A stretch of DNA of 64,000 bases. It comes from Paraphysomonas bandaiensis (lineage: Eukaryota > Protista > Chrysophyceae). Both the position numbers and the translations under genes were made by a program. The stretch spans positions 64,267 to 128,266 of the forward strand of contig CBFFRP010000668.1 in assembly GCA_965644295.1 (NCBI GenBank), given 5' to 3'. Below are positions 9,334-55,514 of this stretch, piece by piece. The notes under the pieces are model-generated. The model saw nothing but the letters and a program-made list of their open reading frames with translations. It did no database searches and was not told where the DNA came from. Numbering within the stretch: the first letter of the stretch is position 1; every line of letters begins with the position of its first letter.

Positions 9334-9955
9334 CCACAAAATAGTTCATTTTGATAAATATACTCAACAAGTCGAATTCGCACATTTTCGTGATGTTCTG
9401 GGGGTAAGTGCCGGAGTGAGCCGCATACATACACATCAGATTATGTTTTGCCCACTCGAAATATACTTGTGTGGTGCAACAAGAAGAAGAGACATTAATT
9501 CGTGTCACTTATATTGACATCTTTGGGACCTACAAAAATAAATAGGCATCCGGGAGCCTGGGCCCACATGAAAAGGGTAAGCGGCATCCGGACTGTTCAC
9601 CTACTTCAGGATCTGTTCCCCAAAGTCAGCAGATGTCTGGTATTATATCAATACAAATGCAGAGAACTATTTATTAGCACTCTAGTAACTAGCTAGCTTT
9701 AACGAGGAATGTACGTCAAAAACGTGGGAAATTTTTTTTCCCACGTTTGCATATTGTTTACTTATATCAGCATTCTGCTTTCTCAGTGATAGAGAGCAAA
9801 AGGGGTTGCACGTTGGTGCTTGCGGTGACGCACAAGAATAGTAGGGTTAAATAGTATAATATCAGACTTATAAGCACTAGTTAGTTAAATTGCAATGCTA
9901 AATTAGTTCTGAATCTTAAACGCCTATTGCTAATAATATGACATCATTCACTACT
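9334..9955 (+). mobile_element. Degenerate copy of ribozyme-headed non-autonomous retroelement (SINE-like)
   Basis: Colinear similarity to 14371-14939: head CTCAACAAGTCGAATTCGCAC..GTTCTGGGGG, body GGCATCCGGGA..GGGCCCAC, tail GGTTGCACGTTGGTGCTTGCGG..ACGCCTATTGCTAAT. Confidence 0.75.
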
Positions 9956-10504
9956 GTGTATCGTTTCTTCTTTCTTTAGTAAAGTATGATTCATTCAGCA
10001 CATACAAAGGCAATTCACAAATTGTCTTTGTCTGGAAAAACTCAAGTTAAACCACCTATTAATAAATATTGTTTAGATGTATACGATTATTGATATTTAT
10101 AGATTGGCAATATATGGTGAAGCCTATCAATATTGCAAGTTGAACTGAATAAATACTGATAAAGTTTATCACAATTGAATTAGTTGAGTGTTGTGCTATT
10201 TCATAGTTCAGTTACTATTCTTGGGAGTTAATATTGGTATCAGTTTTCATGTACATGTTACTAAATTCTCTCATCCGTTCCTATTATGAATTCGGTTCAC
10301 CTATTTTATAATACGACGCAGATTAGTTACACAACATGCAGCAGCACAGGGCATGATTAAGTTACAACTTTCGGTCAAACACTGACTTTTAGACGACGCA
10401 GTACCAAGTTAAAACTTATATTTAATAATTACGACACCGATCTCAGGAAAGAGAATACGCAGAGGATATTTCACATTTCATATCTGGATACTATTATTAC
10501 GGAC

Positions 10505-13346: not shown

Positions 13347-14370
13347 ATGTATGATAGCTTAATTAATTCTACCTTTCGTTAAAGTTTGGGTTTACATGCA
13401 CGTAAATTTAGTCAGTAACATGTCCTACAACAGTTATCCCCACTTTGTTTCAAAACGTATACTCGCATCCCTGCTATTATCCATAAAGTTGCTTTAAAAA
13501 AATGGCAACGAAATCTAACTTATCCGGACGGAAAAAAGGATCAAATAAAATATTTGATAGCAGTGAGTCTAATTCGGAATGAGGACAACATTTGACTGAT
13601 GGTAAGATGGTAACAGTCAGCGGAATAGAGAATAGAGCACGTCTTAGAAAGCAAACTCGACACCGAGCATTAAGCACGTTCATGCCACTGTTGTCAACAA
13701 AAGATTGTTTAGTAGACTTGAGATTGATTTGTTTTGACTGATTTTCGCCAGAGTAGGACTCCTCGGCTCTTAGAGCAAATTATGTGTTTACGCATGAACG
13801 CATGAATCGTCGCTTCTGGAATGAAATTATAGTTGAGCAAGCTATGTTGGCAGCTAATGTACAGGTAATTGATGACTTTAGTATCAGTTAATTGGGGGAT
13901 TATATTGTTGCTACGCAGCCTTGATTTGGAGCAGTGATACTTTTTCAGGGTTAGGGTCACGTCGTGCATGTCAGGCAGTTATTTCGTTATTTCCTCTTCC
14001 CATAACCCGTGGTTAAATATAACTACTGTAGATGCCATCTGGACAGAATCAACAATGCAGACCGCAACGATTCGCCTCTCAGGAGAAAGAAGGAGAAGAC
14101 AACTATTCCTCTATCGCATTTTACGGGGCGCAATATTATATGAATAATGAATCTATCTATCAATGAATAACTATTGCCCTAATATTGCATATTATTATGC
14201 AGTTGGTTTGTTATTATATCACGATACTATGCTTCTAAAAGCCTACTTGGGTACTTGGGCACATGATGTTGTCTAATGACTTCAGCCTACTACTATTACA
14301 ATATATATTAGCGGCACAGTACATAATACAAGAAGGGCATTCCCTTCAGCGAAAAAAACTTTAATATTAT

Positions 14371-14527
14371 GCACAACATCATTACTGGCGCTGATTTGGC
14401 GGAAGATGATGTAACACGACGCTCACCTGCATGAGCGTTCCCTCAACAAAGTCGGACTCGCACCTTTCCGTGGTGTTCTGTGGGGATAAGTACCGGAGAG
14501 ATTCTCTCTGGGAAACTAACGTGAGCC
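14371..14527 (+). ncRNA. Candidate HDV-like self-cleaving ribozyme
   Basis: P1 GCACAAC(14371)/GTTCTGT(14475); P2 CTCGC(14457)/GTGAG(14521); P3 ACC/GGT closing L3 TTTCCGT; GG after P1'; P4 CCGGAGAG-ATT-CTCTCTGG; J4/2 CTAA(C) with putative catalytic C14516. Folded manually. Confidence 0.65.
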
Positions 14528-14939
14528 ACAAACATAGTCAGCAGATATTCTTCTGCCCACACATAGCCGAATGCTTGTGTGGTACAAGGGACACCAACAA
14601 TAAAAGTGTTACTTTTGTATAGACGTCTTTGGGCCCTGACGAATATGGGTCCAGCTCAAGGGCATCCGGGACAGGGCCCACCTGAAGGGTAACCGGGGTA
14701 TTGGGCTGCCTGCTGAAGTCAAGCATCCGGGATGTTCACCTTTTAAGAACTCAGAACGGAAGTGGTTGCACCTTGGTGCTTGCGGCGACTCACAAGCAGC
14801 TTTCGTAGCGTTAAATAGAGTAGGATAATAAAGTTTGTACTGATTAGTTACAGGTAGAGGTCTAACTAGTATGTCTAGCATTCATCTAGCTACCAACAAA
14901 TCGGTACAGGTTTTTAACGCCTATTGCTAAATAAAAGAC
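14371..14939 (+). mobile_element. Non-autonomous non-LTR retroelement (SINE/SIDE-like): structured head plus LINE-derived 3' tail
   Basis: 14753-14939 matches the 3' UTR of the LINE copies at 15164-16159 and 23371-23990; head shared with copies at 9334 and 55514; imperfect flanking repeat ACTTTAATATTAT / ACTTTCAATATAT. Confidence 0.8.
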
Positions 14940-15163
14940 TTTCAATATATATAACTCGTTCATTTATATTCTTACATATATATATATATAATATATATAC
15001 ATACTTCTTACATAATATATAATATTACTTCAGTTTTAAAGCAAAAATGTCACTGACTACACATATATATAATATAATTTATACAGCTCAAGCTATTCCA
15101 CCAAGCTTAGAGTTATTCTTGGTACATCGATGTTTTCCGGTCACAATACTCTCAAATGAATAG

Positions 15164-16159
15164 TAGTGAATGTCTGATTATTTAGCAATAGGCGTTGAGA
15201 CCTTGCATCAATTAGTGGCTAGAAGAATGCTAGTCATACTAGTTAGACCACTACCCGTAACTAATCAATACAAACTCTTTTATCCTACTATTTAACGCTA
15301 CGAAAGCTGCTTGTGCGTCGCCGCAAGCACCAAGGTGCAACCACTTCCGTTCTTTTTGTGTGATATGAAATTCGCCTTTATCGTGTGTCCGTGGACTCAC
15401 CGGCGCTTTTGATCTGGGGGTCTCCCTTTGGGATGGGTCTCCATTGGTTTTGGAGGGGGCTCAGCATTCTGAATTAGGGTCCTGAGTGCACCTAGTTCCA
15501 GATGTGTGGGTTGAGAGTGGTGGGGATTGTTGGGAGGAGGAGTTGGGTTTGTAGTATGTGTTACTGTGCTCCTGTGGGGCCGCGGGTGTAGATAGAGTTG
15601 TCGAAGCCGTCGGCGTTGTGGAGGTCTGGGCAGTCCAGTGCTCTGTCGGGTAGGACCTGTGAGGTGTGCACGTGTGTCTGGAGTCGGATACGCTGTGGGG
15701 GGTCTTCGTTGGACCCCTAGTAGTCGAAGGACTCTCGGACGTTGTCTTGACTGACTGCGTTTCGGACGGGGTCTCGGGAGTAGCCTGGGCGGCCTTTTGG
15801 ACATGGTGATATAGCGACAACCGCGATCCTGTAACATAAGCTTCGCTGCAGTGTAAAGCGGTTGCAGGAGATTAATAACCACTGTTTCTAGGTTCCGTAG
15901 ACTGTGAGCCGTCAGGTGTTTGTGTATGTCATCTCCGAAGACCGTTTCCAGTTGGGCTGCTGTGATGGTTCCAGTCCAGTATCTCTCGACCTGTGGGATG
16001 GAGGGATTCCAGGCTCTGCTGGAGAGTCTCCGCAGTGCAGATGTGATCCAGTTGGGTAAGGTCTGAGTTCTCTGTATTTCGTGTAGCACATTTTTATGCG
16101 ATTGAAATGCAGTTTCCCTTATTTGGGTGATGGATTCATGTGTGCAGTCGAGGCACATC
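15164..16159 (-). mobile_element. 5'-truncated LINE (ORF C-terminus plus 3' UTR)
   Basis: 13-bp TSD CTCAAATGAATAG (15151-15163, 16160-16172); ORF 15397-16164 ends KGRPPDQKRR and is homologous to the ORF at 23611-23940; conserved 3' UTR. Confidence 0.85.
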
Positions 16160-16602
16160 CTCAAATGAATAGAATGTTCTTAAAACAACATTAATATGAC
16201 CTTACTAATCGCTGCTATACTACACATTCCATCTTAAAAGTATATATATTCAACTCTAGAAAACTTTATAGAAAGTTTGGGGAAAAAACGTTTGCTTCAT
16301 ATTATACAATACGACCTGTATAGAAAGGCAGTAGTGTAGGACACACCCTAAACCAACCTCAGCCCAGAATGCGCAGGGTTCAGTAAGGATTAATACATTG
16401 CCTAGTTTTGTCAACACTAACACTGCACAAGGATGTGCCATCGGAAGAGGGCAATAAAAGTATAAAGTTTACTATTCTCTTTTTCCTTCTCATTCGCTAA
16501 AGAGCTATTACTCACTACCATGTATGTTTAGTTTTGACATATCACTGAAGTTGACGTTGTACTACGCAAACATTCAACATCATTGTTTCAACATTATATT
16601 GT

Positions 16603-17390
16603 TCCTTAGCCCTCAACATATTACAGCAACGGACCTGTAATTATTCAATGCACAACTGAACGAAGCAATAAGCAGTGTAAATAATGTATTATTCGTTTAT
16701 CACGAGAATACCAAAGTGAAATTACTTGAAATTTGCGACGATTTTAGATATATCACACAACTCTAACAATAATGCCATCCTGTTTCCAGGAATATTATTG
16801 CTTGTAGCTCACCAGAAGTGATAAACATTAGTATTATGGAGACAAAATATGAATAAAATTCCGTCGACCACAAAAGGAAGCAGACCCCCAATATAACACC
16901 AAGAGCACGAATTAGTCAAAAAAACACTCGTAAATCAGGATTATAGACACTGTCTGCAGGAGTGATTGCACAAAATTAGCCACCATGTTCGTGTGTTTCC
17001 TTAGCCCTCAACATATTACAGCAACGGACCTGTAATTATTCAATGCACAACTGAACGAAGCAATAAGCAGTGTAAATAATGTATTATTCGTTTATCACGA
17101 GAATAACAAAGTGAAATTACTTGAAATTTGCGACGATTTTAGATATATCACACAACTCTAACAATAATGCCATCCTGTTTCCAGGAATATTATTGCTTGT
17201 AGCTCACCAGAAGTGATAAACATTAGTATTATGGAGACAAAATATGAATAAAATTCCGTCGACCACAAAAGGAAGCAGACCCCCAATATAACACCAAGAG
17301 CACGAATTAGTCAAAAAAACACTCGTAAATCAGGATTATAGACTGTCTGCAGGAGTGATTGCACAAAATTAGCCACCATGTTCGTGTGTT
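16603..17390. repeat. Direct tandem duplication, ~395-bp unit x2
   Basis: 16603-16997 and 16998-17390 appear identical except one substitution (TACCAAAG/TAACAAAG) and a 2-nt indel. Confidence 0.95.
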
Positions 17391-23358: not shown

Positions 23359-23370
23359 GTATAATATATA

Positions 23371-23990
23371 TTAAACGTCTTTTTATTTAGCAGTAGGCGT
23401 TAGAAACCTGTACCAATATAGTGGTTAGTTGAATGCTAGTCATGCTAGTTAGACCTCTACCCATAACTAATCCGTTATGGGTAGAGGTCTTCCATTATCC
23501 TACTATTTAACGCTACAGAAGCTGCTTGTGCGTCGCCGCAAGCACCAAGGTGCAACCACTTCCGTTCTAAATTTTGTTTGTGAGTTTCGCCCTGCTTGTG
23601 CGTCTTTGACTCACTGGCGCGTGATGTCTGGGGGTCTTCCCTTAGGATACGGCTCTACCAGGCTCTGTGGTACAGGGTTTTGCATTAATGTCCGAAGTGT
23701 ATCAAGTACTAGATGGGTGTTCTGTGAGGGAAGTGGAGTGGTGGAGGGTGTCGTAGTTTCCTTGCATCGCTTGGGCATCAGGCATAGGTGTAGTTGCCGG
23801 AGACGGCGTCTTTGTCGAGGACCAGATGTTTTCAAGCAGTCCGGTGCTTTATTCCTGCGTGCATGAGAGGTGGTGCATGTGGTTGCAGTGGATGGTAGTC
23901 CCGTCTCTGGTCGTCTTTGGACTCCTAGTAATCGTAGCACCCTTGGGCGTTTCCATTTCCGTTTGCGTTGCGGGTGCGGTCGCGGGAGTT
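23371..23990 (-). mobile_element. 5'-truncated LINE (second subfamily)
   Basis: TSD GTATAATATATA (23359-23370, 23991-24002); ORF RVLRLLGVQRRP..KGRPPDITRQ* homologous to 15397-16164; same 3' UTR. Confidence 0.85.
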
Positions 23991-28097: not shown

Positions 28098-29418
28098 GCA
28101 ATCACCACATTATTACAGTACACAGAATCACAGCTTACTATTCGGCGAGTACTGTGCCTTACAAAGCTCAACTTAAGGCAATCTGTTAATACTATCATCA
28201 TCTGACAAATTCTTTCCTCTACTTGTTAAAATGTAACGAGATGATATCGACATATTTCGCGTAATAAACCGATAGTTGTTTAAAGGAAAGTGTAATGTTA
28301 AAGTTAATTCTACAGTATACGGACAAGAATGGTGGGAGTCATATCATATAGATCCAAAATATTTCTTAAGGGAGTATTTTGTCATCAAGAATACAAGAAG
28401 ATCGCCTTGCAGTCTAGCGAGAATCCTGTACCTCCTGTTTACCCGGTATGTATTATACTGGGAGTGTCTGATGACATTATTTTCTTAAATGTCTTTACAA
28501 CACAGGCGTAATAGTAGATTCCTGGGCCAGGTAATCTTTCAATCAATCAAAAGTTAATAATCAGTCCATTCCAAGCCTGTGCACTGTCGCGACCAAACTA
28601 ACAGCTCCCACTGCACTGGATGTAACATGACTCTCATTGGGAATACATACTCTGACGAGTGTACTTTACAAGCCAACTGCACCGACTACATGAGCACGCA
28701 GTGAAGTGTAAGCATAAACGTCATAGAACAGTTCTGGTACAATCAACTTGCGCATAAACCTGCATACGTGCTATCCATAGAAGCAGTAGTATGGAGGGGA
28801 GAGTACAAGTGATCTAAATTCGGGTTCTCGGACTGTGCCGTGAAGTGGTATCCAACCTGCCCTCCACGATATAGCATGCATACCGCCCATGAGGGTATAT
28901 ATATATGAAGCCAGCCAACGCCGTGCATCGTATTCTGTGCTCTGTATACAAGCTACAAGCTACAAGATACAGCTGTTGTATACATTGTAGTATATGTCAT
29001 ACAGGATACAGCAGTCTGTATACATTGTAGTATATGTCATACAGGATACAGCAGTCTGTATACAGTGGAATGCAATGCTTTGCTTCTCTCTTATTTCCAG
29101 TTTTGTCCTCTTTTGTAACTCACTACTAGTGGACTGATGGTTGCTTGTCCAATAGTGGAAAATCTTGCATGACGTTATGCACAACTAAACTATCACTAGA
29201 AGTTGATCACTTGATACTAATTATAATTCCCACAATGTCTGAAGGATTGATTATGAATACACCCCCGGATGTGTTTGTGTTTGTAGATGATGCAATCGAT
29301 GTCACAGTGAGTTATGTCAACACAACAACTGAAGATTCCACTCTGATATGCAGGTATAGAAGATATAATACAACAACAATGTTTTTCTGTTGTACTCATA
29401 TGCGTGCTTCAGAGATAC

Positions 29419-32400
29419 TGTAGGACTATCCACTTACATATAGAATATATACGTGTACATGTCCTGTATTATATGATTAGTAGTACAGTACTGTATTGTA
29501 TACGTGTACCATGTAGTTAGGAATACAAACTGTAGGGAATGTGATTGTTGGGATTAGCAATAGCCGTTGATATTGTAGACAGTATTATTAGCCGTTGATA
29601 TTGTAGACAGTATTATTAGCCGTTGATATTGTAGACAGTATTATTCATGATTCATTATACGATAATAATCATTATTTTGTACTTCTGTACTTGGGTATTG
29701 CTTTGCACACATACACATATGTATGCAAGCCCACAGTAATATTACTTAATAAGTAGTACTCAATCTCTGTGATATAACAATATTATGGGGGAAAGTAAGA
29801 GAAGCAAAATAAAAGCAGCTCCTCAAATAGAGGAATTGTTAGCTGCTTCGGGTTCTTCGTCTAAAAAGACGAAAAGAGAGAGAGAATCCTCTCGAAAACG
29901 AGCAAGAGATGCAACAACATCATCTCAAATGCAATCTTCTCCTCAAACTGAAACATCGGTAGAGGCGGAAGGAGAATTGAGTGGAGTATCATTTCGTGAG
30001 CTCTCTTCTTCTCAACCAAAGAGAAAGAAGCAAAGGAGTGGAGATCCGCACCCCAACAGGAGTGAGCGCATTGACTTGAATGAAGTCATTGCGACGGAAT
30101 CCACTCCACATGAAGTAATCAATACCGACTCTATTCCCTACTTAGGTAGTGTGCAAGATGAGGATATCATCGAATTTTGTGAAAATCTCTCGAAAAGAGA
30201 TCCTAAAGGGACAAAATTCATAAGGTCAGAAATCATGGCACCAACAGTGCGTGATATGCTTCAGTTTCAGCGACAGCAGGATTTTGGAGATGAGTCTGAC
30301 GAGGACTGGCTAGATCCAAACATTGTAACTACTGAGGAATTGATTCAGTGGTTAAAGCAAGCCTTTCTAGAGGAAGAGGAGCGATACTCTGATACATTGG
30401 AGCCTCTTCCTAGGTTCATAGATAATATCATTGGACCAAAGGTTAAGGTGGATATTCATGTTCCTAAAGTATTCTTAAAAGAATATGGACGTCTGAATGA
30501 GCTTTATAAGCTCATTCCGGAGGCAAGTCTCACAGAGGTAGCCTCGGATACCATAGTCAAAACCCTCAAGAAAAACATTAAACTTGTGGGCGGACATTCC
30601 TTCAGAAAGGATGCCAAAGAGAAATTTATAGCGGATATAGGCCAAGGTCAATCTGCACCAAAAGATTTCGGAGCATTCTGTAGAAAGGTGCGAGAGCTTA
30701 ACAATGACTATAGTCAAGCTGTGAGAAAAGTAAAGAGGATGGAAACTAAATTGGATTCCAAAGAAACGTCTAAGTCTAACAAGTCTAAGACTACAAAAAC
30801 TTCATCCTCCAGCTCATCCTCAAGTACTAAAGCAACAACTGATACTAAGGAAGCATGTTGGATATGCGGTAATCTTCATAAAGGTGACTGCACCCGCAAA
30901 ACCTGTGCATGGGCTAACCATGAAAAGAAGCCATGGAAAGATTCCACACAGGGCAAAAAATATGCGGCTATGGGTTGGAGTACCTGCCCTTATGTGGAGA
31001 ATCCTGATGGTCCTCCGAGATCGAAAACAAGTAAGTTATCATGCCCTAAGTGTTTATATATAAATGCTATTGACATGAATAATGATATGCTCGATGTCTT
31101 TGTATATCCTAAAGCTGATGTCAATGTACAACAGGTAAAGGAAAATCTAAGGGCTAAAGCCTTATTGGACACGGGGGCTACTGGGAATAATTTCATTAAC
31201 CAAGAACTTGCTGATATGTTAGTTGCTAGGTATAATATTCCATTGCACGAGTGTAACATTAAAATTTGTAGTGCGCTTGATAATGCTTGTTGTAGTAGCA
31301 AGCAATATATGATAATAACTATAAGATTAACTGATGAGTATAACAATACTCTTGATATTGAGTTGCAATGTTTGATAATAGATAGCACCTTTGATATCAT
31401 AATTGGTAGAGAAACTATCAAGAAATATAGATTAGTTGATCATTTTCCATCTCACTTTATGGAAAGAGAGTTAGCAGGGAAAATGCTAGCTACGGCCGCG
31501 GGCCATGCTGAGAAGACTCAGCTTCTCTCGGAACATATTAGTGAGAGAGCCACATGTTATAATAACATGGAAACATTAAGGCGCCAAGCTAAGGAACACC
31601 TTAGTTATAATAATAATTTACTTACAAGTAATAGCTTGGTTAGTACTATGTATTCACCTCCAATATCATCCATGCGTATAAGTGCATATGAAAAGGAAGA
31701 TATAGGCGAGATTAGAGATAACTATCTGGAGTCAATCCCAGAAGAAATAGTTACAAATACTCAGGAAAAAGTAGAAGGTACTACGTTACCAACTAAAATC
31801 TCTGGTCCCGAATCTTTACAAAGGAGGGTGAGAGAAATCCATGAAATCTATAAGGATAGATTTAGAACCACAGTGTCGGATATGCCAATGGATGTTCCAC
31901 CTTTTGAATTAGAGGTAGATAGGGATGCTTGGGAACAACCAAAACATTGTGGTCCGCCACGAAAGATGGATCGAGTACGACAGTATGCTTGTAAAAAGCA
32001 AATCGATACATTTGTGGAGCATGGAATAATACAACCAAGTACGGCTCCTTATTATAGCCAGGTATTATTAGTTCCCAAACCAAATGATAAATGGCGATTC
32101 TGTGTAGACTATAAAGGTCTAAACAAGCACACACAGAGGGAACGTTGGCCAATACCTAACATCAAAGAAATGTTAGAACGTATTGGGTCTAAGAAACCCA
32201 AATACTTCATAATTCTGGATTTAGTATCTGGTTATTACCAGGCTAAAATTTCAGAGTACTCGAGAAAGTGGACGGCATTTATAACCTTCTGGGGAGTATT
32301 CGAATGGCTCCGACTACCCATGGGTTTGAGTGGTGCTCCATCATACTTTCAACGAGTATTAACAACAATTGTGCTTGCCGGGTTGATTATGTTCATATGT

Positions 32401-34999
32401 GAATTATATCTAGATGACCTGATTATATATGCTTCTACAGAAGATGAACTAATTGAAAATTACGTTAAAGTTCTAGAACGCTTCAGGAAATACAATGTTT
32501 ACATTAATCCTGAGAAAGTGAAAATAGGAGAGTCCGAAGTACAATATGTAGGACATACTCTAAATGAGGAAGGGTTACACTTTACTAGAGAACGTCTGGA
32601 TAGTGTATTAAATTTCCCAAAGCCTGAAACTATGAAGGGTCTAAAATCTTTCCTCGGATTGGCAAATTATTTTCGGGATCACGTGCACAACCACTCCTTA
32701 GTGGTGAGACCGTTAAATAAAATGCTTCTCAACTATCATAGACGTAAACGTCTACAATGGACAGAGGATGCCAATGAAGCATTTGAAAAGATCAAATTGA
32801 TGATCCATGAATGTCCAACATTATTTTTCATTGATGACGAGTCACCAATATATTTATTGACCGATGCATCTGATTATGGAATAGGAGCATACCTCTACCA
32901 AGTAGTAGATGGTGTAGAACGTCCAATAGGATTTCTCAGTAAAACATTCGATGAAAGAATGATGAATTGGGATACACCTCAGAAAGAAGGATATGCTAAA
33001 TACTATGCCTTAGATAAATGGGACTACCTATTAAGGTATAGATACTTTACGATCAAAACAGATCATAAAAATATTACTCAGTTGAGAACTGATTACGCTA
33101 AGGATAAGAAAGTTCAGCGATGGTTGAAATGTTTCCAAGCATATGATTATGATCTATGTGATATTAAAGGATCTGATAATGTTGTTGCTGATGCATTTAG
33201 TAGACTATGTGCATTAGAATCTAAAATGGAAACAAAATGTGCTTCCCTAATTCCCGATATTAAAGTTCCAAACAAGGAATGGGAAATTATTAAAAGATTT
33301 CATAACAATGTTACAGGTCATCATGGTATTGATCGTACAATACAAAAATTACGAGACAATGGTCATAAATGGTCAAAGCAAGGGGCACATGTGACAAAAT
33401 TTATTAAAACTTGTCCTTGTTGTCAAAAGATGAGTAGAATTAAACCAATAATTAATGCTCATCCCTTTACTGTCTCAACATATGGCCCGATGCAAAGAAT
33501 AGCAGTGGATTTTATTCAGAGTCTGCATCCAGATGAGGATGGATACACTAATATATTAGTGATTATCGATTCTTTTTCTAGGTGGGTAGAATTAATCCCT
33601 ACTAAGAATCTCACTGCCATGGCGGCGGCAAAGGGATTGCTTCAACACCTGGGTAGATATGGAGCACCTATTGAGATTCATTCGGATCTTGGACCAGCAT
33701 TTGTGGATGATTTAACAAAATCATTGATAGAAATGGTTGGAAGTAATCAATCATTTTCGATGGCGTATTCTAAAGAAGAAAATGCTATAGTGGAACGTGC
33801 TAATAAAGAAATTTTAAGGCACTTAAGAAATATTATATTTGATAAAAATGTACTAAATAATTGGTCAATGTATCTACCTTTAGTACAAAGAATTATGAAT
33901 TCTTCTAAACATAGAAGCACCGGCGTTACTCCCGCTAGTATTCTATTTGGGAATGCAGTAGATTTAGATAAGAGTTTATTCATTGAACACAATGAGAACT
34001 TGGACGGGAACGAACAAAAGCTATCACATTGGATAGATAGAATACAAAAGGTTCAGTCCACTATTATGGATGTTGCAAGACGAAATCTTCGCAAACATGA
34101 TGAAATCCACATGGCAACTGCACCAAATATACAAACAAAAGAATTTCCAATAAATTCTTATGTGTTAGTTGAGCATAGACAAAATGCTTTACGTCCTGGA
34201 CCGGCAAGTAAGTTATTACCATATCTTAAAGGTCCAATGCGAGTAGTCAATGTTATTGGAGACAAATATACTCTTCAAGATATTGTTACTAAACGTAATA
34301 AAGACTATCATATAAAGAAATTAAGGGAATTTAATTACGATCCCTCTACTATTGACCCCTTACAAGTGGCATGTAAAGATGGTGGAAACTTTTATGCTAT
34401 TGACCATATTTCAAAAATAAAAGGTCGAGCTAAAGGTCCGAAAAGTCAAATAAAATTTCTAGTACATTGGATAGGGTATGAAAAACCTACATGGGAACCA
34501 TGGGCTAACGTTAGAAAAACGTATGCTCTACAAAATTTCCTAACTCAACATCCTGATGAAAATGTAAGAAATTTACTACCTCGAAATGTGGTTTATTCTT
34601 CTGATGAAGAAGATTAATAACAAAGTTTACAGAATTGAGTGTCAATATAACACATTAACACATCAATTATAAGGGGAGGTAGTGTAGGACTATCCACTTA
34701 CATATAGAATATATACGTGTACATGTCCTGTATTATATGATTAGTAGTACAGTACTGTATTGTATACGTGTACCATGTAGTTAGGAATACAAACTGTAGG
34801 GAATGTGATTGTTGGGATTAGCAATAGCCGTTGATATTGTAGACAGTATTATTAGCCGTTGATATTGTAGACAGTATTATTAGCCGTTGATATTGTAGAC
34901 AGTATTATTCATGATTCATTATACGATAATAATCATTATTTTGTACTTCTGTACTTGGGTATTGCTTTGCACACATACACATATGTATGCAAGCCCACA
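29419..34999 (+). mobile_element. Intact Ty3/gypsy chromovirus LTR retrotransposon
   Basis: 317-bp TG..CA LTRs (29419-29735, 34683-34999) that appear identical, 4-bp TSD ATAC, PPT AAGGGGAGGTAG, 3 x 28-bp tandem repeat in each LTR. Confidence 0.97.
29785..34617 (+). CDS. Gag-Pol polyprotein (zinc knuckle, protease, RT, RNase H, integrase, chromodomain)
   Basis: CWICGNLHKGDC, LLDTGA, YLDD, TDASDYGIGAYL, HHCC/DDE integrase after RNase H, FLVHWIGYEKPTWEPWANV. Confidence 0.97.
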   Translation: MGESKRSKIKAAPQIEELLAASGSSSKKTKRERESSRKRARDATTSSQMQSSPQTETSVEAEGELSGVSFRELSSSQPKRKKQRSGDPHPNRSERIDLNEVIATESTPHEVINTDSIPYLGSVQDEDIIEFCENLSKRDPKGTKFIRSEIMAPTVRDMLQFQRQQDFGDESDEDWLDPNIVTTEELIQWLKQAFLEEEERYSDTLEPLPRFIDNIIGPKVKVDIHVPKVFLKEYGRLNELYKLIPEASLTEVASDTIVKTLKKNIKLVGGHSFRKDAKEKFIADIGQGQSAPKDFGAFCRKVRELNNDYSQAVRKVKRMETKLDSKETSKSNKSKTTKTSSSSSSSSTKATTDTKEACWICGNLHKGDCTRKTCAWANHEKKPWKDSTQGKKYAAMGWSTCPYVENPDGPPRSKTSKLSCPKCLYINAIDMNNDMLDVFVYPKADVNVQQVKENLRAKALLDTGATGNNFINQELADMLVARYNIPLHECNIKICSALDNACCSSKQYMIITIRLTDEYNNTLDIELQCLIIDSTFDIIIGRETIKKYRLVDHFPSHFMERELAGKMLATAAGHAEKTQLLSEHISERATCYNNMETLRRQAKEHLSYNNNLLTSNSLVSTMYSPPISSMRISAYEKEDIGEIRDNYLESIPEEIVTNTQEKVEGTTLPTKISGPESLQRRVREIHEIYKDRFRTTVSDMPMDVPPFELEVDRDAWEQPKHCGPPRKMDRVRQYACKKQIDTFVEHGIIQPSTAPYYSQVLLVPKPNDKWRFCVDYKGLNKHTQRERWPIPNIKEMLERIGSKKPKYFIILDLVSGYYQAKISEYSRKWTAFITFWGVFEWLRLPMGLSGAPSYFQRVLTTIVLAGLIMFICELYLDDLIIYASTEDELIENYVKVLERFRKYNVYINPEKVKIGESEVQYVGHTLNEEGLHFTRERLDSVLNFPKPETMKGLKSFLGLANYFRDHVHNHSLVVRPLNKMLLNYHRRKRLQWTEDANEAFEKIKLMIHECPTLFFIDDESPIYLLTDASDYGIGAYLYQVVDGVERPIGFLSKTFDERMMNWDTPQKEGYAKYYALDKWDYLLRYRYFTIKTDHKNITQLRTDYAKDKKVQRWLKCFQAYDYDLCDIKGSDNVVADAFSRLCALESKMETKCASLIPDIKVPNKEWEIIKRFHNNVTGHHGIDRTIQKLRDNGHKWSKQGAHVTKFIKTCPCCQKMSRIKPIINAHPFTVSTYGPMQRIAVDFIQSLHPDEDGYTNILVIIDSFSRWVELIPTKNLTAMAAAKGLLQHLGRYGAPIEIHSDLGPAFVDDLTKSLIEMVGSNQSFSMAYSKEENAIVERANKEILRHLRNIIFDKNVLNNWSMYLPLVQRIMNSSKHRSTGVTPASILFGNAVDLDKSLFIEHNENLDGNEQKLSHWIDRIQKVQSTIMDVARRNLRKHDEIHMATAPNIQTKEFPINSYVLVEHRQNALRPGPASKLLPYLKGPMRVVNVIGDKYTLQDIVTKRNKDYHIKKLREFNYDPSTIDPLQVACKDGGNFYAIDHISKIKGRAKGPKSQIKFLVHWIGYEKPTWEPWANVRKTYALQNFLTQHPDENVRNLLPRNVVYSSDEED

Positions 35000-36680
35000 A
35001 TACTACTTTGCCCATCAAAGTGGAAGTTTTGGATGCATCAGATCCGGAATACAAACTGGTAGGGTCTGAGGCTCTCTCATCTATAATATAACATACTACA
35101 TACAGGACATTGAAACTATACCAAATTTAAGCATTTCTTCTTCCGGATATGTCAAATTTCCAATAAGAGTAAAGGAAAGTGGCAAGTGTATTCGAATTCG
35201 TGCAATGACCACCGATGGCCACTTGAGTTGTGAATCATCTCAAACCTACCGTGTCATACAGGCAAAGCTACATATTGAAAATATTGATGAAATACCAAAA
35301 ATGTATTACACTAGACCTAAAACAAACAATGATATCAAGGTGGTTGTATGCGTCAAAGATAAGTTTGGAAATCACGTTGATGAATCGATATCACGTAATA
35401 TTAACTGCGTTGTTCAGTGTAATGCCGATAATACATCTAAAGTTCCAATAAAGCTCACACTGAATCAAGAGCAAGGTTTTATAAATGGAAAATGTACTAT
35501 AAGATTTAGAATCGAATCACTTTCTAGTGCACATGGTAATAGTGCATTTGTGGTCCGTATATCCAGTTCGGACATGAACCAGTGCGTTGGGTATACCGAA
35601 TTGCATCCTATAGTTGTGAAGGCAAAGCACCATGGCAAAAATGCGCAGTGCCATGAATATAAGACAAAAAGAATCCGAACGGATGACTGCAATGGTTACA
35701 GTGCACCTAAAATCAACGAATTGCGGCAATCTGGAAATAACAAAAACTCCTTGAGGAGTCACGAGCTAAAGGAAAAACGAATCAAAACAAACGAGATGAA
35801 TTATCACAGTGCACCTAAAATAAGCAAATCGTTTCAAGCTGGAAAATGGCTAAATTCATCTTTAGACGTTCCTGAAGAATTTTCTCAATGGAAGAAAATT
35901 ATGGAGTATTATATGTGCCATGACAGAGACGATATCCAAACACAAAGCAGTGAAAGCGAAAATGATATTGAGACCGGGTTGTCTTTCGATTTTGACGAAG
36001 TTGTAAGTTTTATGGAGGGGGTATAAGGGCCATTAAATGAGGAATGTTGAGTTTTGCTGTTTAGTGAGCAATTAATTTGTGTAATTCTATGTATTAGAAT
36101 ACAGTGGGAGTTGACTGTACCATAAAAACTAACAACGTGAGCTGTTGTGGTAATGAAACTGAAATATATTGTCTGTACAAGATATTGACGGTATGAGATC
36201 GTACTAGAAAGAGTTGGTGTAGAAGAGATAAATAAGTTGGGGAATGATGTCTGGTGTTATTTATTTTTTTACAGATTTAAGTGATCACCTATGTTGCATT
36301 ACGTACATATTACATAACCTGCTAGCTGTTAGCAATGTCAACTTCCAATAAGGAACACATGTAGTTGTGTACATTTATATGGCCATGGAAAATTGAAAAT
36401 ATTTATATCTACTAGCTTCCGACGATAAAATATCTAGAGCTCGGCTGTAACTATGCAACTATAGTCAGTGACACTCGGAATAGTAAATGACAGTGTGGAA
36501 TAAACTAATGGACGAGTAGAATTCAAATTGCTCGCTATATTTTTGCTGCAACTACGGCTAACTGTTTGTACAAAGAATAAATATGTGATAACGACGAATA
36601 TTTTGTAAGCCAGCAATGAAATTTGTTACTTCACGACGCACTGCGATTTAACGACACTAGACTGCAATTTAGGTCACTTA

Positions 36681-37199
36681 TTTTAGGCACATACTTGTGA
36701 TTCTGTTCACGCTTTACAAAGTCTCAATTATTATTCGTCGCTTTATAAAATTCGCCGGTATACATCTCATATTTCTGGATACTGTGCATACCAGACAATG
36801 TTCCGTTTCTATCCTAGAACTGTTCAATACTCTGATAAGGAATACCACAAAAAAATTCAAATACATAATATTCGTAACATCAATATACACTCGTTATAGA
36901 GCCATTTAAGAACTCCTCCTAGACAATAGCATCAAGCAACCATTCAAAAATCCCGAAGTCAGTCATTGTTTGTGGCGCTTCTGAGTATGAACTGGCGCAT
37001 CTTCTATACTGCACTGTCTCAAAAGTTTGAATCATTTTACGTGCCATGAGAAGTACATGAGATGGGTATATCAAAAAATGGCATATTCCACTGTAGTCAC
37101 ACTGATAACTTCCTTTACTTCCCTGTATACATACATCACAGCATCGTAAACAACAACAGCAAGAAGATAAAACACATCGCACTGATACCTGATGGCATA
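36681..37199. repeat. 519-bp host segment, copy 1 of direct duplication
   Basis: Appears identical to 47429-47947. Confidence 0.95.
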
Positions 37200-38652
37200 C
37201 CTTGATCTCTTCCTGCGTCCTGGGCTGGCTCGGATCTCGCGGGGCGCGATGTCGAAAAGATGCCCCGTACACCTGAGCAAGGTCATGACATAGGTGATAC
37301 AATCGGTCTGGACCAGGCGCGAAGGTCAAAATGGGTAGGTCCGAGCTCTGGTCCTTGGGAGTCAATGTAAAGAAATCCCCGACCTCACTGTCAAACTGAA
37401 TGCTGTATCTCTCGGCAAGTCGGTGTTGTGACAGTATGTTGATCCTACACTCGGGTGCAAAGTAGCATTGTCCGAATAGTCGATGCGTGCCGACGCATTT
37501 CGAGGTAATACCAGACCCGATCCCATTGACTGAAATAGGACTTATGGTCTTGAGGTCGGACAGCCCTGAGGTAGATTTCACAACTGAGACATTGGCGCCA
37601 CTGTCGATGATGTAGTCGTCTATGTCTCCAGAATCTACACCGACAGTGGAACAGAGAGATACCCACTCGGAGTCCGACTGAGCGAATGACACTGACTTCT
37701 CGCTCTGGCTGCGCTGACTCTGAAATTTCTTCTTAGTGTGCGCGGGCTTCTTGAGTATTCCCTTGTTCTGACGAGGTGGATTCGTATTGGGGTTCTTTGC
37801 TCTCCATCTCTTCAGTGAAAAACATTCTTGGGCAGAGTGGCCTGTCTTATCGCAAAAGGCACATTGGATCTGCTTCTGGTCGTCGTGGTCGGCGGCATGA
37901 TGGGCGAATGCAGAGTCTTGATCGCGTGGAGTCTTTCGAACGTGTAGTCCTACTTGGCGCGATGACTGAGAGAAACGGTCGATCCTGCGCTTCGCATCCT
38001 CCAGCGTTGCCGGGAACCGATCCGTGTCCATCTCGGTCAGCATTTCGGTCACTATTTGGCCAAAGGTCGCGACATTCAGGCTGAGCAAATAAGTATAGAT
38101 CACCCACTTCGGCTCTGGATCGATCTGCATGTCTTCACAGATCTGGAGCTTCTGATCGAATCGTGCGTGATGTTCGGCTAGACTCTGAGATCCCTGCTTC
38201 AGCGCTTGGAGTCTCGACTTTGCCTTCTCCTTCTCTAAGAATGAGGCCTCCTTGCCAGCAAAGGTATGTGACTTGATCACCAGCTTCCAAAGCGTGAGGG
38301 GGCAGCGGCTTTCGATGACTTCTGCGTATTCATCGATGTGGCTCTCCATTTGAGTGATGGAGGCCTCGGACATATGTAGAATTATGTCTCCGTAGAGCCT
38401 AGTGGTAGACTCTTCAAAACGCTCAACCTTCTTGGTGTGTGCGAGGTATTTGGTCTTGATGATCTCAAACTCCATGTCTTTATGCTTCGGGAACGCTTCC
38501 GGCATTGGGAACTCGTTCTCGATGTACTCTGGCATGCTGCCTGTATCGAGCATGGTCCCAGCATCTCCGTAATGAGTGATGGCGTATGTCAAGAATTGTC
38601 TGCGCCATGTGGATAGGTTATTCGGAGTGTAAGTCAGCTTTCCGACGTCCAT
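37200..38652 (-). CDS. Copia A gag-protease, 3'-truncated
   Basis: CAFCDKTGHSAQEC knuckle, IIDSGANVSV protease; breaks after TQEEIK into host sequence. Confidence 0.88.
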
Positions 38653-39124
38653 GCTTTTCTCTATTGTGTTGGACAAAGACTGATGTAGCACAAAAAGCTC
38701 TCCTCTCAAGGATATGCTGTACAATGTTGCAAGTCTAAAGTGCAAGTGTAATTAAATGGTTGTTATTACCACTAATCGGGTCAATAGAGAAAAGTGACTC
38801 TATATGATGATTGATTCACAAGAGGCAATGCACTTGGGTGGCTATGGATGCTACTGACGATTATACTATAAGTGGCTATGAATGCTACTGACGATTTCAT
38901 GAGAGGCAATAAATGATAGTGACGTATCTCTTGCATTCTGTATGTATACAGGTGTTATACAGACATGGGGAGTACGTGCAAGTATCTGCTACTCCTGATG
39001 ACTAACTACAAAAATAGTGTAACACACCCCTGCAATGGAGTTATGTGTACTGAGTGTGCATCATGCGACATTGGAATGACAGTTTACCGTAAGACGTATG
39101 GGAATCTTGGAGGCAGCTGAGGCT

Positions 39125-41807
39125 TCACTGGAGCAGGTTTTGCCTCAGGTCGGTGAAGTTCTGGCCTCCAAGGGGCTTAGTCAAAATGTCGGCAATCATT
39201 TCCTTGGTGGGCTTGTAGCAGAGCCGAATGTCACCGTTCAGGATGCGCTCCTGTAGGTAATGGTATCGCACTCTGATGTGCTGAGTCCGGCCTGATCTGG
39301 ATGTACCATTCTCAGATAAGGAGATGGAGGACTTGTTGTCCTGATAAAGCACAGTCGGAGGCTGCGGGTAACCCAGGTCTGAGAGCAGTGTTCTCTGGAC
39401 GAGGATTGGGGGAATACCAGTGTCTGCAGAGATGAGTTCTGACTCGGATGAGGAGCGGCTCACACACTTCTGCTTGACTGACTTTGCAAGTATGGTTCCA
39501 CCACTCCTGGAGCCTATCTTCATCACGATGCCCGTATGCCCTTTCCCATCTGGGTGAACTCCATAACTCGCGTCTGCCCAACACTCAAGTGTGATAGAGT
39601 CTGGGTCGAGTGTCAGCGTCAGGTCTTTGGTGCCATTGATGTATGCCAACACTCGCAGCAGCTTGCATCGGTCATGGGTGTCTGGACACTTTGCCCTGGT
39701 GGCTAAATGGCTGCACGCAAGCAAGATATCGGGTCTGATCCTCTTGGCTAGGTACATAAGTTTCATCAGGAGGCTGAGATATTCACTAGCGTCCACCGGG
39801 TCTCCAGGCTTGTCGTTCCGGAACAAGTGCTTTGTCGCTGGAGTCTTGGCCTTGGATCCGTCGCTGTGGTCACGAAGTAGCTCGTCAATGTAAGCAGGCA
39901 TGGAGACAGTGATGTGTCCCTGGTCATGCACGGTGAGGACCATCCCGAGATATGGGATCTGGGATTCGGTTTCTGTGGTTACCTTTCCGAACTTGTCACT
40001 GAGGAGCTTCTCGAGCCATTCGGTGAGCTCCTTCGAAGTTGTGGTGACCAGGAGGTCGTCCACGTGGAGTGCTATGGTGCACTTGCCACGTTTGCTCACA
40101 TATATAAACACACATGGATCGGCGTCGCTGATTCGGAATCCGGCCTCCAGCAGCACCCCTGAAATGGTTCGGTGCCAGCGTAGTCCTGCTTCGGGTAGTC
40201 CGTACAAGGCCTTGACTGCGTCAGCAAGCATTGTCCCATTGGGTTGAACATACTTTCGGAGATGAGGCTTGTGTCGCACGTAGACCTCGGTAACGTCCTT
40301 AGGGATCCGGATGATGTGGGGATGCTCAAGGTCGGCGTTTAGGTAGGCACCCGGGATGTCCATCGTGGCTATGGTCCTCTTCTCATAGGCGGCAACGCTC
40401 AGAATTGTCATGACAGATTCAGTCTTGACTGTGGGGGACGATGTGTCACCGGAGGTGTATAGGGTGCGGTCGGTCATGTGACCGCCACCGACCAGCCTGG
40501 CCTTGATCTTCTCCAAGGTGTTGGTCATAGCTGAGCGCTTCTCCTTACAAAACATGCTCGAGGGGAGTATTTTGCTATGCTTCCTACCACTGGTGTCCGC
40601 ATGGCTCACAGGGATCAATGCACGCTTTCCTTGGAAGAGTTGGTCCATCTCCCTGACTATGGCGTCCTCTGCTATCCCTGGATGAGCTCTTAGTGCTTCA
40701 CGAACTGATAAGTTGAATGCAAACATTTCGTCTGACGAGGTTAAGAAGGCTGTAGGGTCCTCATCCCTGTCACGGCTATGATCACGAGTAGGTTCAGATC
40801 GCCGCTCGGGGTCACTGTCGTCCTGCTGGTCTGGGCCTGCTACCTGGTCATCCTCGGGCACGAGTACTGGGGGACTGTGATCTGTAGACTGACTCGGAAC
40901 GGTATCCTCATCGTCGTCCGACTCGTCATCTGACACTAGCTCTGGTGCGTCGTCGTCATCACGGCTCCAGTCAGGAGGATTGGGATGATCCTCGTACGTC
41001 GTCACGGGGTCATTGCTATGTCGAGACCTATCATGGTCTGCGATCCTGTTCACAGTGTTGATGATGGTCGGGGTAAATAGGCATGGCTTGAAAGTCGACC
41101 GGGAGACTATCCTCAACGAGTCTAGTGTGAATACTCTGATACCACCGTTGGAGTTAGGGTCTCGTCCCACTACAATTGCATCCTCGACTCGGGAATCCTC
41201 AGATGTACCACTAGAGGGTTGGTTCGGAGTCTTCACTTGAACGAGCTTTCCAAATTCAATGCGGATGTCCTTGGGGGCAATGACTTTCTTACCGGTGACG
41301 ACCTCCTTGGGGGTACGGACCCCTGACCTCTTGTTGGGGGTCATGTTCAGCGTGACGATGGTGTCAATCACTGCAGCCTCATTCAGTCGGGCAGGGAGCC
41401 GGTACACCTGAGTGAGCCGTAGTATACGGACTCTCTCCTTCACCACACGTGTGCTCCGCTCGGCTCTTCGCTCGTGGAGTCCACGCCCACTGTACATGCA
41501 CTGGATGCCCATCCCGTTCAATTCCGACTCTAAGGCTTTGAACGCTACTTCCCGGTCGGTCCTTATGGATCGTACTGTCCATCCGTATGATTTGTACGCG
41601 TTGAACATCCGGGTAAATGCTTCTAATAGGTGGTTGGACCTTTTGCTCGGTATGCGGGCTGCCATGAGGTAATTCACTGTGTCCTCAACTGATAGCAGAT
41701 ATGGTGCCTTGGTGCCCTTTTCTGAGGTAATGAAGAAAATATCGCAATGTAGTAGCTGCCCTGTAGTGACTAGCTCGTCTGGAGTCGATGAAATGGCACT
41801 TGGGTTC
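39125..41807 (-). CDS. Copia A integrase-RT-RNase H, 5'-truncated
   Basis: LHCDIFF/TDRE/AERSTRVVKER, KALYGL, HVDD, WADASY, ADILTKPL; integrase zinc-finger region missing. Confidence 0.92.
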
Positions 41808-55282: not shown

Positions 55283-55514
55283 CAGTATTGAATGCCTTAA
55301 TATTAGCAATAGGCGTGTAAAAGTCAGAACTAATGAAGCATTGCAAATAACTAACTAGTACTCTTTTACCACACAAACATTTGGCTATGAGTTTGGAGAA
55401 CGTTATCCGCTCTCAATGTTTGCGGCTCATGTTAGTTTTTTGAAGAATTCTCACCTGTACTTATTCACCATAACACCAACAAAAGGTGCGAGTCGACTTT
55501 GTTGAGGGTTGTGG
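55283..55514 (-). mobile_element. Short copy of ribozyme-headed non-autonomous retroelement
   Basis: Reverse strand reads CCACAAC CCTCAACAAAGTCGACTCGC ACC TTTTGTT GGT GTTATGG..CTAACATGAGCC joined to tail ACGCCTATTGCTAAT. Confidence 0.75.

What the first reader, a model, noticed from the sequence alone, without database searches (positions are those of the whole stretch)
14371..14939. SINE-like retroelement with an HDV-like ribozyme head and a LINE-derived tail
Seen: the first ~157 nt fit the HDV nested double-pseudoknot order: P1 GCACAAC/GTTCTGT with G-U at the cleavage site, P2 CTCGC/GTGAG, P3 ACC/GGT around L3 TTTCCGT, GG, an 8-bp P4, and J4/2 CTAA with C14516. Two extra hairpins lie in J1/2. 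The last ~190 nt match the 3' UTR of the LINE copies in this window. No ORF homology and no recognisable Pol III A/B boxes. Known: R2, RTE and L1Tc/ingi elements and R2 SIDEs use HDV-like ribozymes to cut themselves out of read-through transcripts. Inference: a promoter-independent non-autonomous element that self-cleaves its 5' end and borrows the LINE RT; I do not know of such a family in this kind of protist. Caveats: C-C mismatch in P1 and only U-G pairs in P1.1, so this copy may be inactive.
Basis: partly seen in the sequence, partly recalled or inferred. Interest (0 to 1): 0.85.

Follow-up and report, generated by a model that had tools for sequence, protein, structure and literature searches.

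The report
SINE with ribozyme-like head, LINE tail

Summary
The repeat family is real: about 1,400 copies, 10-16 bp target-site duplications, and a structured 3' tail about 195 nt long that it shares with a 7.3-kb LINE.

The element runs from 14440 to 14948, not from 14371. None of 29 other aligned copies has that DNA. P1 strands of equal quality turn up by chance many times upstream.

It matches a signature shared by the tested L1Tco ribozyme of Trypanosoma congolense and at least 10 metagenomic families. Those families have perfect, covarying 7-bp P1 helices.

In the SINE, the natural P1 strand is the exact 5' end (CCCTCAAC). It pairs with two central mismatches, or as 8 bp with a 2-nt bulge, in every subfamily examined.

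The partner LINE does not have this head. Rfam gives no hit and the copies show no covariation.

A ribozyme-type head is likely (about 0.6); cleavage is untested (about 0.35). Many other first-reader notes in this genome flag the same head.

The parts
14440..14948 (+). Whole SINE-like retroposon copy (509 bp). It is an older, decayed member of the family: 88-91% identical to the other copies, with one extra T at 14481, a 16-nt deletion and a small insertion in the body, and no recognisable target-site duplication.
   Evidence: Genome search; alignments with flanks; TSD scan; contig loose ends at 14440.
14371..14439 (+). Unique flanking DNA, not part of the element.
   Evidence: Absent from 29 other copies; single-copy in the genome; the hairpins do fold but are locus-specific.
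14440..14447 (+). 5'-terminal CCCTCAAC, the only family-wide candidate for the P1 5' strand. It is the first base of 1,378 genomic copies.
   Evidence: pairing options.
14457..14461 (+). P2 5' strand CTCGC.
   Evidence: 93% of cells paired with 14521-14525.
14462..14474 (+). P3 ACC/GGT around a 7-nt L3 (TTTCCGT here, TTTTCGT in the family). It contains CGTG, which in Pr77 is also a downstream promoter element.
   Evidence: The same P3 and the L3 pattern U...CGU occur in L1Tco. DPE: PMC4748587.
14475..14485 (+). P1 3' strand region GTTCTG(T)GGGG; the family has GTTCTGGGGG. It pairs with 14440-14447 either as 8 bp with two central mismatches followed by GG for P1.1, or as 8 bp with a 2-nt bulge.
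14493..14511 (+). P4 hairpin, 8 bp with a 3-nt loop, preceded by the class motif AGTAC (14489-14493).
   Evidence: 90% of cells paired; G-U to G-C/A-U one-sided changes.
14516..14520 (+). J4/2 CTAA plus C. C14516 is the candidate catalytic cytosine. It sits inside the class motif GGGAAACTAA.
14521..14525 (+). P2 3' strand GTGAG.
14753..14948 (+). LINE-derived, structured 3' tail ending ...AAGACTTTCAATAT, with no poly(A).
   Evidence: 86% to the LINE 3' UTR; 57 predicted pairs, 4 with compensatory changes between SINE and LINE tails.
15164..16158 (-). 5'-truncated 995-bp copy of the partner LINE: the end of the ORF plus a 233-nt 3' UTR.
   Evidence: at least 40 copies at 98-100% identity; RT lies 2.4 kb upstream in full copies.
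55363..55508 (-). Head of a second, degenerate family member in the window (78% identity).

Best explanation
Window 14440-14948 is an old copy of a roughly 510-bp SINE-like retroposon.

Shown: the family has about 1,400 copies. The copies have a fixed 5' end and 10-16 bp target-site duplications. The last ~195 nt are the structured 3' UTR of a very young 7.27-kb LINE with a single ORF carrying SET, APE endonuclease and RT domains.

Inferred: the LINE's reverse transcriptase recognises that tail and copies the SINE RNA by target-primed reverse transcription.

Shown: the first ~86 nt are the most conserved part of the element. They carry the signature of the L1Tc/Pr77-type HDV-like ribozyme: the 5'-terminal P1 strand, P2, P3 ACC/GGU, L3 UNNNCGU, AGUAC, P4, GGAAAC-UAA, then the P2 return strand.

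Inferred: this head fixes the RNA 5' end at C14440. It would do so by self-cleavage out of read-through transcripts, by acting as an internal promoter as Pr77 does in trypanosomes, or by both.

It would be CCCTCAAC (14440-14447) with GTTCTGGG(GG), and it is imperfect in all subfamilies. Cleavage may therefore be weak, or may depend on a bulged P1.
For: Family, ends and TSDs.

LINE partner and tail.

Head conservation: 98-100% in nt 1-45 against 56-92% in the body of divergent copies.

Match to the class: the T. congolense L1Tco 5' end (its 78-nt ribozyme is reported highly active, PMC4035085) has the same P3, L3 pattern, AGTAC, GGAAGCTAAG and P2 layout. Global alignment to two Pr77 heads gives z = 2.2 and 2.7.

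A motif common to the SINE and L1Tco retrieved at least 120 metagenome hits. Of 75 analysable hits, 52 have a perfect 7-bp P1 strand 13-21 nt upstream of CACC. At least 10 families have different, covarying P1 sequences.

Features that the motif did not impose (GRARCNAR followed by a P2 of 5 bp or more) are shared by the SINE. They arise in only 102 of 200,000 flank shuffles.

In 647 kb of SINE-masked background from the same genome, a tight core (L3 U..CGN plus P4 of 8 bp or more) occurs 0 times.

The 5'-terminal 8 nt are complementary to the stretch directly after P3. The minimum-free-energy fold also pairs C1-A6 with U40-G45.

SINE sequence is deep in RNA-labelled runs that lack this locus's flanks.
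Against: P1 in the canonical register has U-U and C-C mismatches at positions 4 and 5 in essentially all 38 copies and all subfamilies. The duplex energy is -4.4 kcal/mol, against -12.2 for a perfect helix.

That quality of P1 arises in 10% of flank shuffles.

In the published trypanosomatid set, one P1 mismatch together with a short P2 gave very low activity, and some well-folding candidates were inactive (PMC4035085).

No compensatory change supports any helix of the head.

No Rfam HDV-like model matches, even in a 156-nt search.

Local alignment to Pr77 heads is not significant.

The motif used for the metagenome scan was derived partly from the SINE itself, so the match to the class is partly circular.

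Contigs cannot show RNA 5' ends, and the RNA label of runs X1 and X2 is a guess.
Confidence: 0.6

Rival explanations
1. The head is not, or is no longer, a ribozyme. It is a conserved internal promoter or protein-binding module. The precise 5' end at C14440 is a transcription start, and the HDV-like look is a relic of ancestry or a coincidence of local hairpins.
For: The two central P1 mismatches are fixed in all subfamilies, as if those bases were kept for a reason other than pairing. P1 quality is not beyond chance (p about 0.1). CGTG sits at +30 to +33; the same motif in Pr77 is a downstream promoter element needed for transcription from +1 (PMC4748587; PMC3185411). There is no covariation and no Rfam hit. 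A permissive HDV-like core descriptor matches about once per kb by chance.
Against: The non-imposed class features are jointly rare by chance (5e-4). The tight core is absent from 647 kb of background. The 5'-terminal nucleotides are complementary to exactly the stretch where P1 must lie. In Pr77 the promoter and the ribozyme coexist, so a promoter role does not exclude cleavage.
Confidence: 0.3
2. One reading: the element starts at G14371. P1 is GCACAAC with GTTCTGT, and a 79-nt J1/2 carries two hairpins.
For: The pairing exists in this one copy with one C-C mismatch.
Against: 14371-14439 is absent from all 29 other aligned copies and is single-copy in the genome. Many P1 strands of equal or nearly equal quality occur by chance. 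All class members place the P1 strand 13-21 nt upstream of CACC.
Confidence: 0.02
3. It is a short internally deleted element (SIDE), like NARTc or R2 SIDEs, derived from a LINE that carries the same head at its own 5' end.
For: This is the origin of all known ribozyme-headed non-autonomous elements (PMC4035085, PMC3414825).
Against: Full-length copies of the tail-donor LINE start with unrelated sequence and have no HDV-like core. Genome-wide, heads (1,378) and SINE body motifs (1,199) occur in similar numbers and, where compared in the listed places, at a fixed ~171-nt offset. No head with canonical spacing exists elsewhere in the genome.
Confidence: 0.06

Closest known systems
NARTc / NARTco / RIME and SIDER1/2 of trypanosomatids (Pr77 hallmark, L1TcRz HDV-like ribozyme)
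   Same: Short non-coding retroposons whose first ~77-95 nt form an HDV-like ribozyme that cleaves at +1. The motifs are shared in the same order: C(C/U)CU start, P3 ACC/GGU (in L1Tco), L3 U...CGU, CGUG, AGUAC, GGAA(A/G)CUAA, then P2. They are mobilised by a LINE. In L1Tc the same stretch is also a promoter.
   Different: There the head is shared with the autonomous LINE (L1Tc/ingi), and P1 is a clean 7-bp helix. Here the partner LINE lacks the head, P1 has two mismatches or a bulge, the elements have no A-rich tail, and the host appears not to be a trypanosomatid: its nearest named homologues of a housekeeping-type protein are only 31-36% identical (oomycetes). Activity is untested.
R2 SIDEs and R2/RTE/Baggins 5' HDV-like ribozymes
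   Same: A 5' ribozyme releases the element RNA from a co-transcript, and a 3' end is recognised by the LINE protein.
   Different: R2 is site-specific and its SIDEs are internal deletions of R2. Their ribozyme sequences are unrelated to the L1Tc-type signature seen here.
Stringent-type SINE/LINE pairs that share a 3' tail (for example tRNA-derived SINEs paired with L2, CR1 or RTE LINEs)
   Same: A composite element whose tail is copied from the partner LINE's 3' UTR. There is no poly(A), TSDs are present, and the tail structure is conserved.
   Different: Those SINEs have Pol III heads (tRNA, 5S, 7SL). This head matches none of them.

Membership tests
SINE-like LINE-dependent retroposon | Many dispersed copies with fixed ends and target-site duplications | tested here: met
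   1,378 heads in the genome; about 23 of 30 copies have TSDs of 10-16 bp.
SINE-like LINE-dependent retroposon | 3' region homologous to the 3' end of an autonomous LINE in the same genome | tested here: met
   86% identity over 196 nt to the LINE 3' UTR. The LINE has APE and RT domains and at least 37 full-length young copies.
SINE-like LINE-dependent retroposon | Pol III-type head (tRNA, 5S, 7SL) | tested here: not met
   No Rfam or ARAGORN match. It is therefore SINE-like in behaviour, not a classical SINE.
HDV-like ribozyme | Order P1-P2-P3-L3-P3'-P1'-(P1.1)-P4-J4/2-P2', with P1' directly after P3' | tested here: met
   using the true 5' end.
HDV-like ribozyme | Continuous 6-7 bp P1 starting at the cleavage site | tested here: not met
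   8 positions with U-U and C-C mismatches in the centre, or 8 bp with a 2-nt bulge. 52 of 75 class hits have a perfect 7-bp P1.
HDV-like ribozyme | 3-bp P3, ~7-nt L3, and a cytosine in J4/2 (CNRA) | tested here: met
   ACC/GGT, TTTTCGT, CTAA.
HDV-like ribozyme | P1.1 of 1-2 bp between L3 and J1/4 | tested here: inconclusive
   Only U-G pairs are possible in the canonical register, and none in the bulged register. L1TcRz itself has a single P1.1 pair (PMC3185411).
HDV-like ribozyme | Covariation supporting the helices | tested here: inconclusive
   No pair changes on both sides within the SINE family; the copies are too alike. P1 does covary across the metagenomic class families.
HDV-like ribozyme | Self-cleavage at the P1 base, dependent on the J4/2 cytosine | not testable with these tools
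   Needs an in vitro transcription assay.
L1Tc/Pr77-type hallmark | Sequence signature CACC-U...CG-UGGUG, then P1', then AGUAC, then P4, then GGAARCNAA, then P2' | tested here: met
   The part not imposed by the search motif has p about 5e-4. Whole-head alignment to Pr77 gives only z = 2.2-2.7.
L1Tc/Pr77-type hallmark | Head shared with the autonomous LINE partner | tested here: not met
   The LINE 5' end is unrelated.

The most novel reading that the evidence does not exclude
This would be a true composite SINE built from an L1Tc/Pr77-type HDV-like ribozyme (possibly also a promoter) joined to the 3' UTR of an unrelated SET-domain LINE. It would be active in a marine protist outside the trypanosomatids and would work with a bulged, non-canonical P1. 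It would also show that the 'trypanosomatid' Pr77 signature is a widespread eukaryotic retroposon ribozyme class, seen here in soil, termite-gut and marine metagenomes.
Probability: 0.3. Interest if true: 0.7.

Novelty: new variant of a known kind. Interest (0 to 1): 0.5.

Why it matters
If the head cleaves, this is a SINE that needs neither a Pol III promoter nor descent from its LINE. It would be a ribozyme module recruited on its own to define a retroposon's 5' end.

It would also take the L1Tc/Pr77 ribozyme type well beyond trypanosomatids. The non-canonical P1 would be a natural test of how much P1 irregularity the HDV fold tolerates.

If the head does not cleave, the finding is an ordinary tail-sharing SINE/LINE pair with an unusual conserved head of unknown origin.

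In either case, the many notes in this genome that call this head a ribozyme should use the 5' end at the CCCTCAAC start. They should also record that P1 is imperfect.

Tried and rejected
- Rfam on the region, the whole window, a 156-nt head and the LINE 5' end: no ribozyme, tRNA, 5S or 7SL match. A resemblance to 5S rRNA that I recalled from memory had no tool support and was dropped.
- Covariation on 38 heads, for both the HDV-like fold and the minimum-free-energy fold: no compensatory pair, so uninformative.
- Local alignment of the head to two Pr77 heads: not significant. Global alignment: weakly significant.
- My own HDV-like descriptor in permissive form matches about once per kb, so it is worthless as evidence. 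Only the tight form discriminates.
- A head-bearing LINE in this genome: none found. The LINE 5' end is unrelated, and a canonical-spacing pattern has 0 genome hits.
- A possible long element from 55508 to 50823(-) in the window: rejected. It is a degenerate head plus a separate tail fragment, with host-like ORFs (RNase_T) between them.
- Naming the organism: exact protein look-up failed. The nearest named homologues are 31-36% identical (oomycetes; unnamed metagenome hits reach about 40%), and the only identical protein is on an unnamed JGI contig.
- Laying reads: only assembled contigs were available, so RNA 5' ends could not be read.
I did not try to get round it.
- One script call was empty by mistake.
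- A covariance model of the metagenomic class was not built, because the search motif was partly derived from the SINE and the score would be circular. Flank shuffles were used instead.

Full report
**1. What is at the coordinates**

The tail match is also real. Window 14753-14947 aligns at 86% to 15353-15164 on the minus strand, and at 83% to 23568-23364.

**2. The family and its true ends**

The stretch is a member of a large repeat family (3,416 first-look candidates, 40 near-full copies). Every other copy matches only from query base 61-70 onward.

I aligned 30 copies with 110 nt of upstream flank. Similarity begins abruptly at CCCTCAACAAAGTCGG, which is window 14440, and ends at ...AAGACTTTCAATAT, which is window 14948. 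About 23 of the 30 copies carry 10-16 bp target-site duplications that abut exactly these ends.

Genome-wide, the 25-nt 5' terminus occurs 1,378 times with 3 or fewer mismatches, against 0 for the reversed control. A body motif occurs 1,199 times and, in the listed places I compared, at a fixed ~171-nt offset from the head.

In the DNA-like run X14, 88 contigs diverge from the window exactly upstream of 14440. Window 14290-14439 occurs once in the genome.

So the element is 14440-14948 (509 bp).

This window copy is a relatively old one. It is 88-91% identical to the others, has an extra T at 14481 and an internal 16-nt deletion, and has no clear TSD.

**3.

No. I held the conserved core fixed and scanned 90 nt upstream for 7-8-nt strands able to pair with the P1 3' strand. 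This found 20 solutions with 2 or fewer mismatches in the window copy. In the unrelated flank of copy L004 there is even a perfect 7-mer 42 nt upstream of the element. The G/U-rich 3' strand accepts many partners.

**4. The partner LINE**

The neighbour at 15164-16158(-) is a 995-bp, 5'-truncated copy of a LINE. At least 40 other copies of it are 98-100% identical. In other contigs an RVT_1 hit lies 2.4 kb upstream of this segment.

Comparison of four fetched loci puts the full-length 5' end at L073:3214 and L074:3169, which gives a length of 7.27 kb. At least 37 copies carry the first 787 nt at 97-100% identity.

Intact copies have one giant ORF with a SET domain, an APE endonuclease domain and RT. 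Its relatives are unnamed environmental proteins, several with the same SET+EEP+RT make-up.

The LINE's 5' end (CTATCCTGTTTTC...) is unrelated to the SINE head. It has no HDV-like core under even my permissive descriptor, and no Rfam hit.

The shared tail folds into a conserved structure. Four of its pairs change on both sides between SINE and LINE tails while staying paired. Both elements end without poly(A), in AGAC(T/A)TTCA(A/C)TA.

These are the hallmarks of a stringent, tail-recognising SINE/LINE pair. Mobilisation by this LINE is inferred from them; it is not shown.

**5. The head**

The first 45 nt are the best-conserved part of the element: 98-100% identical even in copies whose body is 56-92% identical.

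Rfam finds nothing, even when only 156 nt are searched. ARAGORN finds no tRNA.

With the true 5' end, the HDV-like order of elements can be completed without any flank:
- C1-C8 (CCCUCAAC) opposite G36-G43 (GUUCUGGG), directly after P3';
- G44-G45 available for P1.1;
- P4;
- CUAA(C);
- P2'.

However, positions 4/40 and 5/39 are U-U and C-C. The duplex is worth -4.4 kcal/mol, against -12.2 for a perfect one.

An alternative register pairs C1-C5 with G45-G41 and A6-C8 with U38-G36, leaving C39 and U40 bulged. The minimum-free-energy fold uses its lower part, CCCUCA with UGGGGG (-7.7 kcal/mol; its A6 pairs with U40, not U38).

On 38 heads (30 distinct), neither fold has a single pair with changes on both sides. 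The copies are too similar to decide between them.

**6. The link to the L1Tc/Pr77 type**

Other first-reader notes in this genome suggested a resemblance to the trypanosomatid Pr77 hallmark, so I tested it.

The supplement of PMC4035085 gives the T. congolense L1Tco 5' end; its 78-nt ribozyme is reported as highly active. It reads CTCTGGC (P1)...CC, ACC-TCAACGT-GGT (P3/L3), GCCAGGG (P1'), TCC, AGTAC, P4, GGAAGCTAAG, then P2'. The SINE has the same P3, the same L3 pattern, AGTAC, GGGAAACTAAC and a 5-bp P2, all in the same order.

Pairwise statistics are modest. Local alignment is not significant. Global alignment gives z = 2.2 to L1Tco and z = 2.7 to a T. congolense SIDER1 head. The two trypanosome heads score z = 6.6 against each other.

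I then scanned JGI metagenome contigs for the motif common to the SINE and L1Tco, CACCTNNNCGTGGTG-N2-6-GGG-N2-6-AGTAC. My rough estimate was about 20 chance hits. The scan stopped at 120.

Of 75 analysable hits, 52 have a perfectly complementary 7-nt strand 13-21 nt upstream of CACC. They fall into at least 10 families with different, mutually compensating P1 sequences, for example CTCGGTC/GACCGGG, CCCCAGC/GCTGGGG, CCCTCTC/GAGAGGG, GCTCACC/GGTGGGC and CCCCACC/GGTGGGG. In several families, similarity between copies starts at the first P1 base. Several families also have G(A/G)A(A/G)CNA(A/G) followed by a P2 of 5-10 bp.

The motif therefore marks a real and widespread class of HDV-like ribozymes.

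The SINE shares the features that the motif did not impose. With the motif region held fixed and the flanks shuffled, GRARCNAR plus a P2 of 5 bp or more arises in 102 of 200,000 trials. In 647 kb of SINE-masked sequence from the same genome, a tight core (L3 U..CGN plus P4 of 8 bp or more) occurs 0 times, while a permissive core occurs about once per kb.

The SINE differs from the class in P1. It has two mismatches in the canonical register, a quality reached by 10% of shuffles. It also has 13 nt rather than about 10 between GGT and AGTAC. The bulged register restores the class's usual 3-nt spacer.

No head with canonical spacing exists anywhere in this genome.

**7. Expression**

Only assembled contigs were available. 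The locus's unique flanks are covered only in run X14 (depth about 86). The SINE itself is covered at very high summed depth in X14 and also in X1 and X2 (RNA by guess) and in X5, a poly(A) marine metatranscriptome. None of those three covers the flanks.

This fits transcription of family members. It cannot show where the RNAs start.

**8. Reading**

Shown: a LINE-tail-sharing, TSD-flanked, non-coding retroposon whose 5' end is fixed at C14440, with a conserved 5' domain carrying the L1Tc-type HDV-like signature.

Inferred: that this domain sets the 5' end by self-cleavage, by promoter action as in the Pr77 dual system (PMC3383444, PMC3185411, PMC4748587), or by both.

The published trypanosomatid work warns that one P1 mismatch together with a short P2 gave very low activity, and that some well-folding candidates were inactive. 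I therefore put about 0.6 on "ribozyme-type head" and about 0.35 on efficient present-day cleavage.

**9. Novelty**

Ribozyme-headed non-autonomous retroposons are already known: NARTc, RIME, SIDER and R2 SIDEs. What is different here:
- the head is not shared with the partner LINE, so the element is a true composite;
- P1 is non-canonical;
- the host appears not to be a trypanosomatid: its nearest named homologues of a housekeeping-type protein are only 31-36% identical and are oomycete (unnamed metagenome hits reach about 40%);
- the signature appears to be widespread in environmental eukaryotes.

I class it as a new variant of a known kind, and that holds only if it is active.

Noticed in passing
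L073:3214-10000 (full-length LINE); window 15164-16158(-) is its truncated copy: The partner LINE's single giant ORF contains a SET (lysine methyltransferase) domain (PF00856, E 3.4e-9) upstream of the APE endonuclease and RT. Environmental relatives share the SET+EEP+RT architecture (for example P0122, P0130, P0136, P0158). A SET domain inside a non-LTR retrotransposon seems unusual. At least 37 full-length copies are 97-100% identical, so it was active very recently.
   Followed up: partly
L076-L155 (metagenome contigs): At least 10 families in soil, termite-gut-like and marine metagenomes carry an L1Tc/Pr77-type HDV-like ribozyme signature with perfect, covarying 7-bp P1 helices, often at the first conserved base of a repeat. 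This suggests the 'trypanosomatid' hallmark is a widespread eukaryotic retroposon ribozyme class.
   Followed up: partly
L002, L018, L020, L024 (around position 1400-2200 of each): SINE copies are inserted into older copies of the same SINE, with TSDs made of SINE head sequence. This is either nested self-insertion or simply high density.
   Followed up: no
window 16602-17390: A 395-bp tandem duplication at 99-100% identity, just beyond the truncated LINE copy.
   Followed up: no
window 9361-9460, 9794-9957 and 55283-55508(-): Short, degenerate or rearranged fragments of SINE-related heads and tails. In the 55508 copy the P1 3' strand reads GTTATG (C39 to A), which does not repair the canonical P1.
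   Followed up: partly
window 23364-23648(-): A second tail-bearing element, 79-83% identical to the LINE 3' end over ~280 nt and with a different upstream part. It may be a related LINE subfamily or the 'head-less' tail-sharing family noted elsewhere in this genome.
   Followed up: no
window 29412-34975 and 36678-47725: LTR retrotransposons with near-identical LTRs and long intact ORFs (1,610 and 1,646 aa). The window is a dense transposon nest. They were observed only and not analysed.
   Followed up: no
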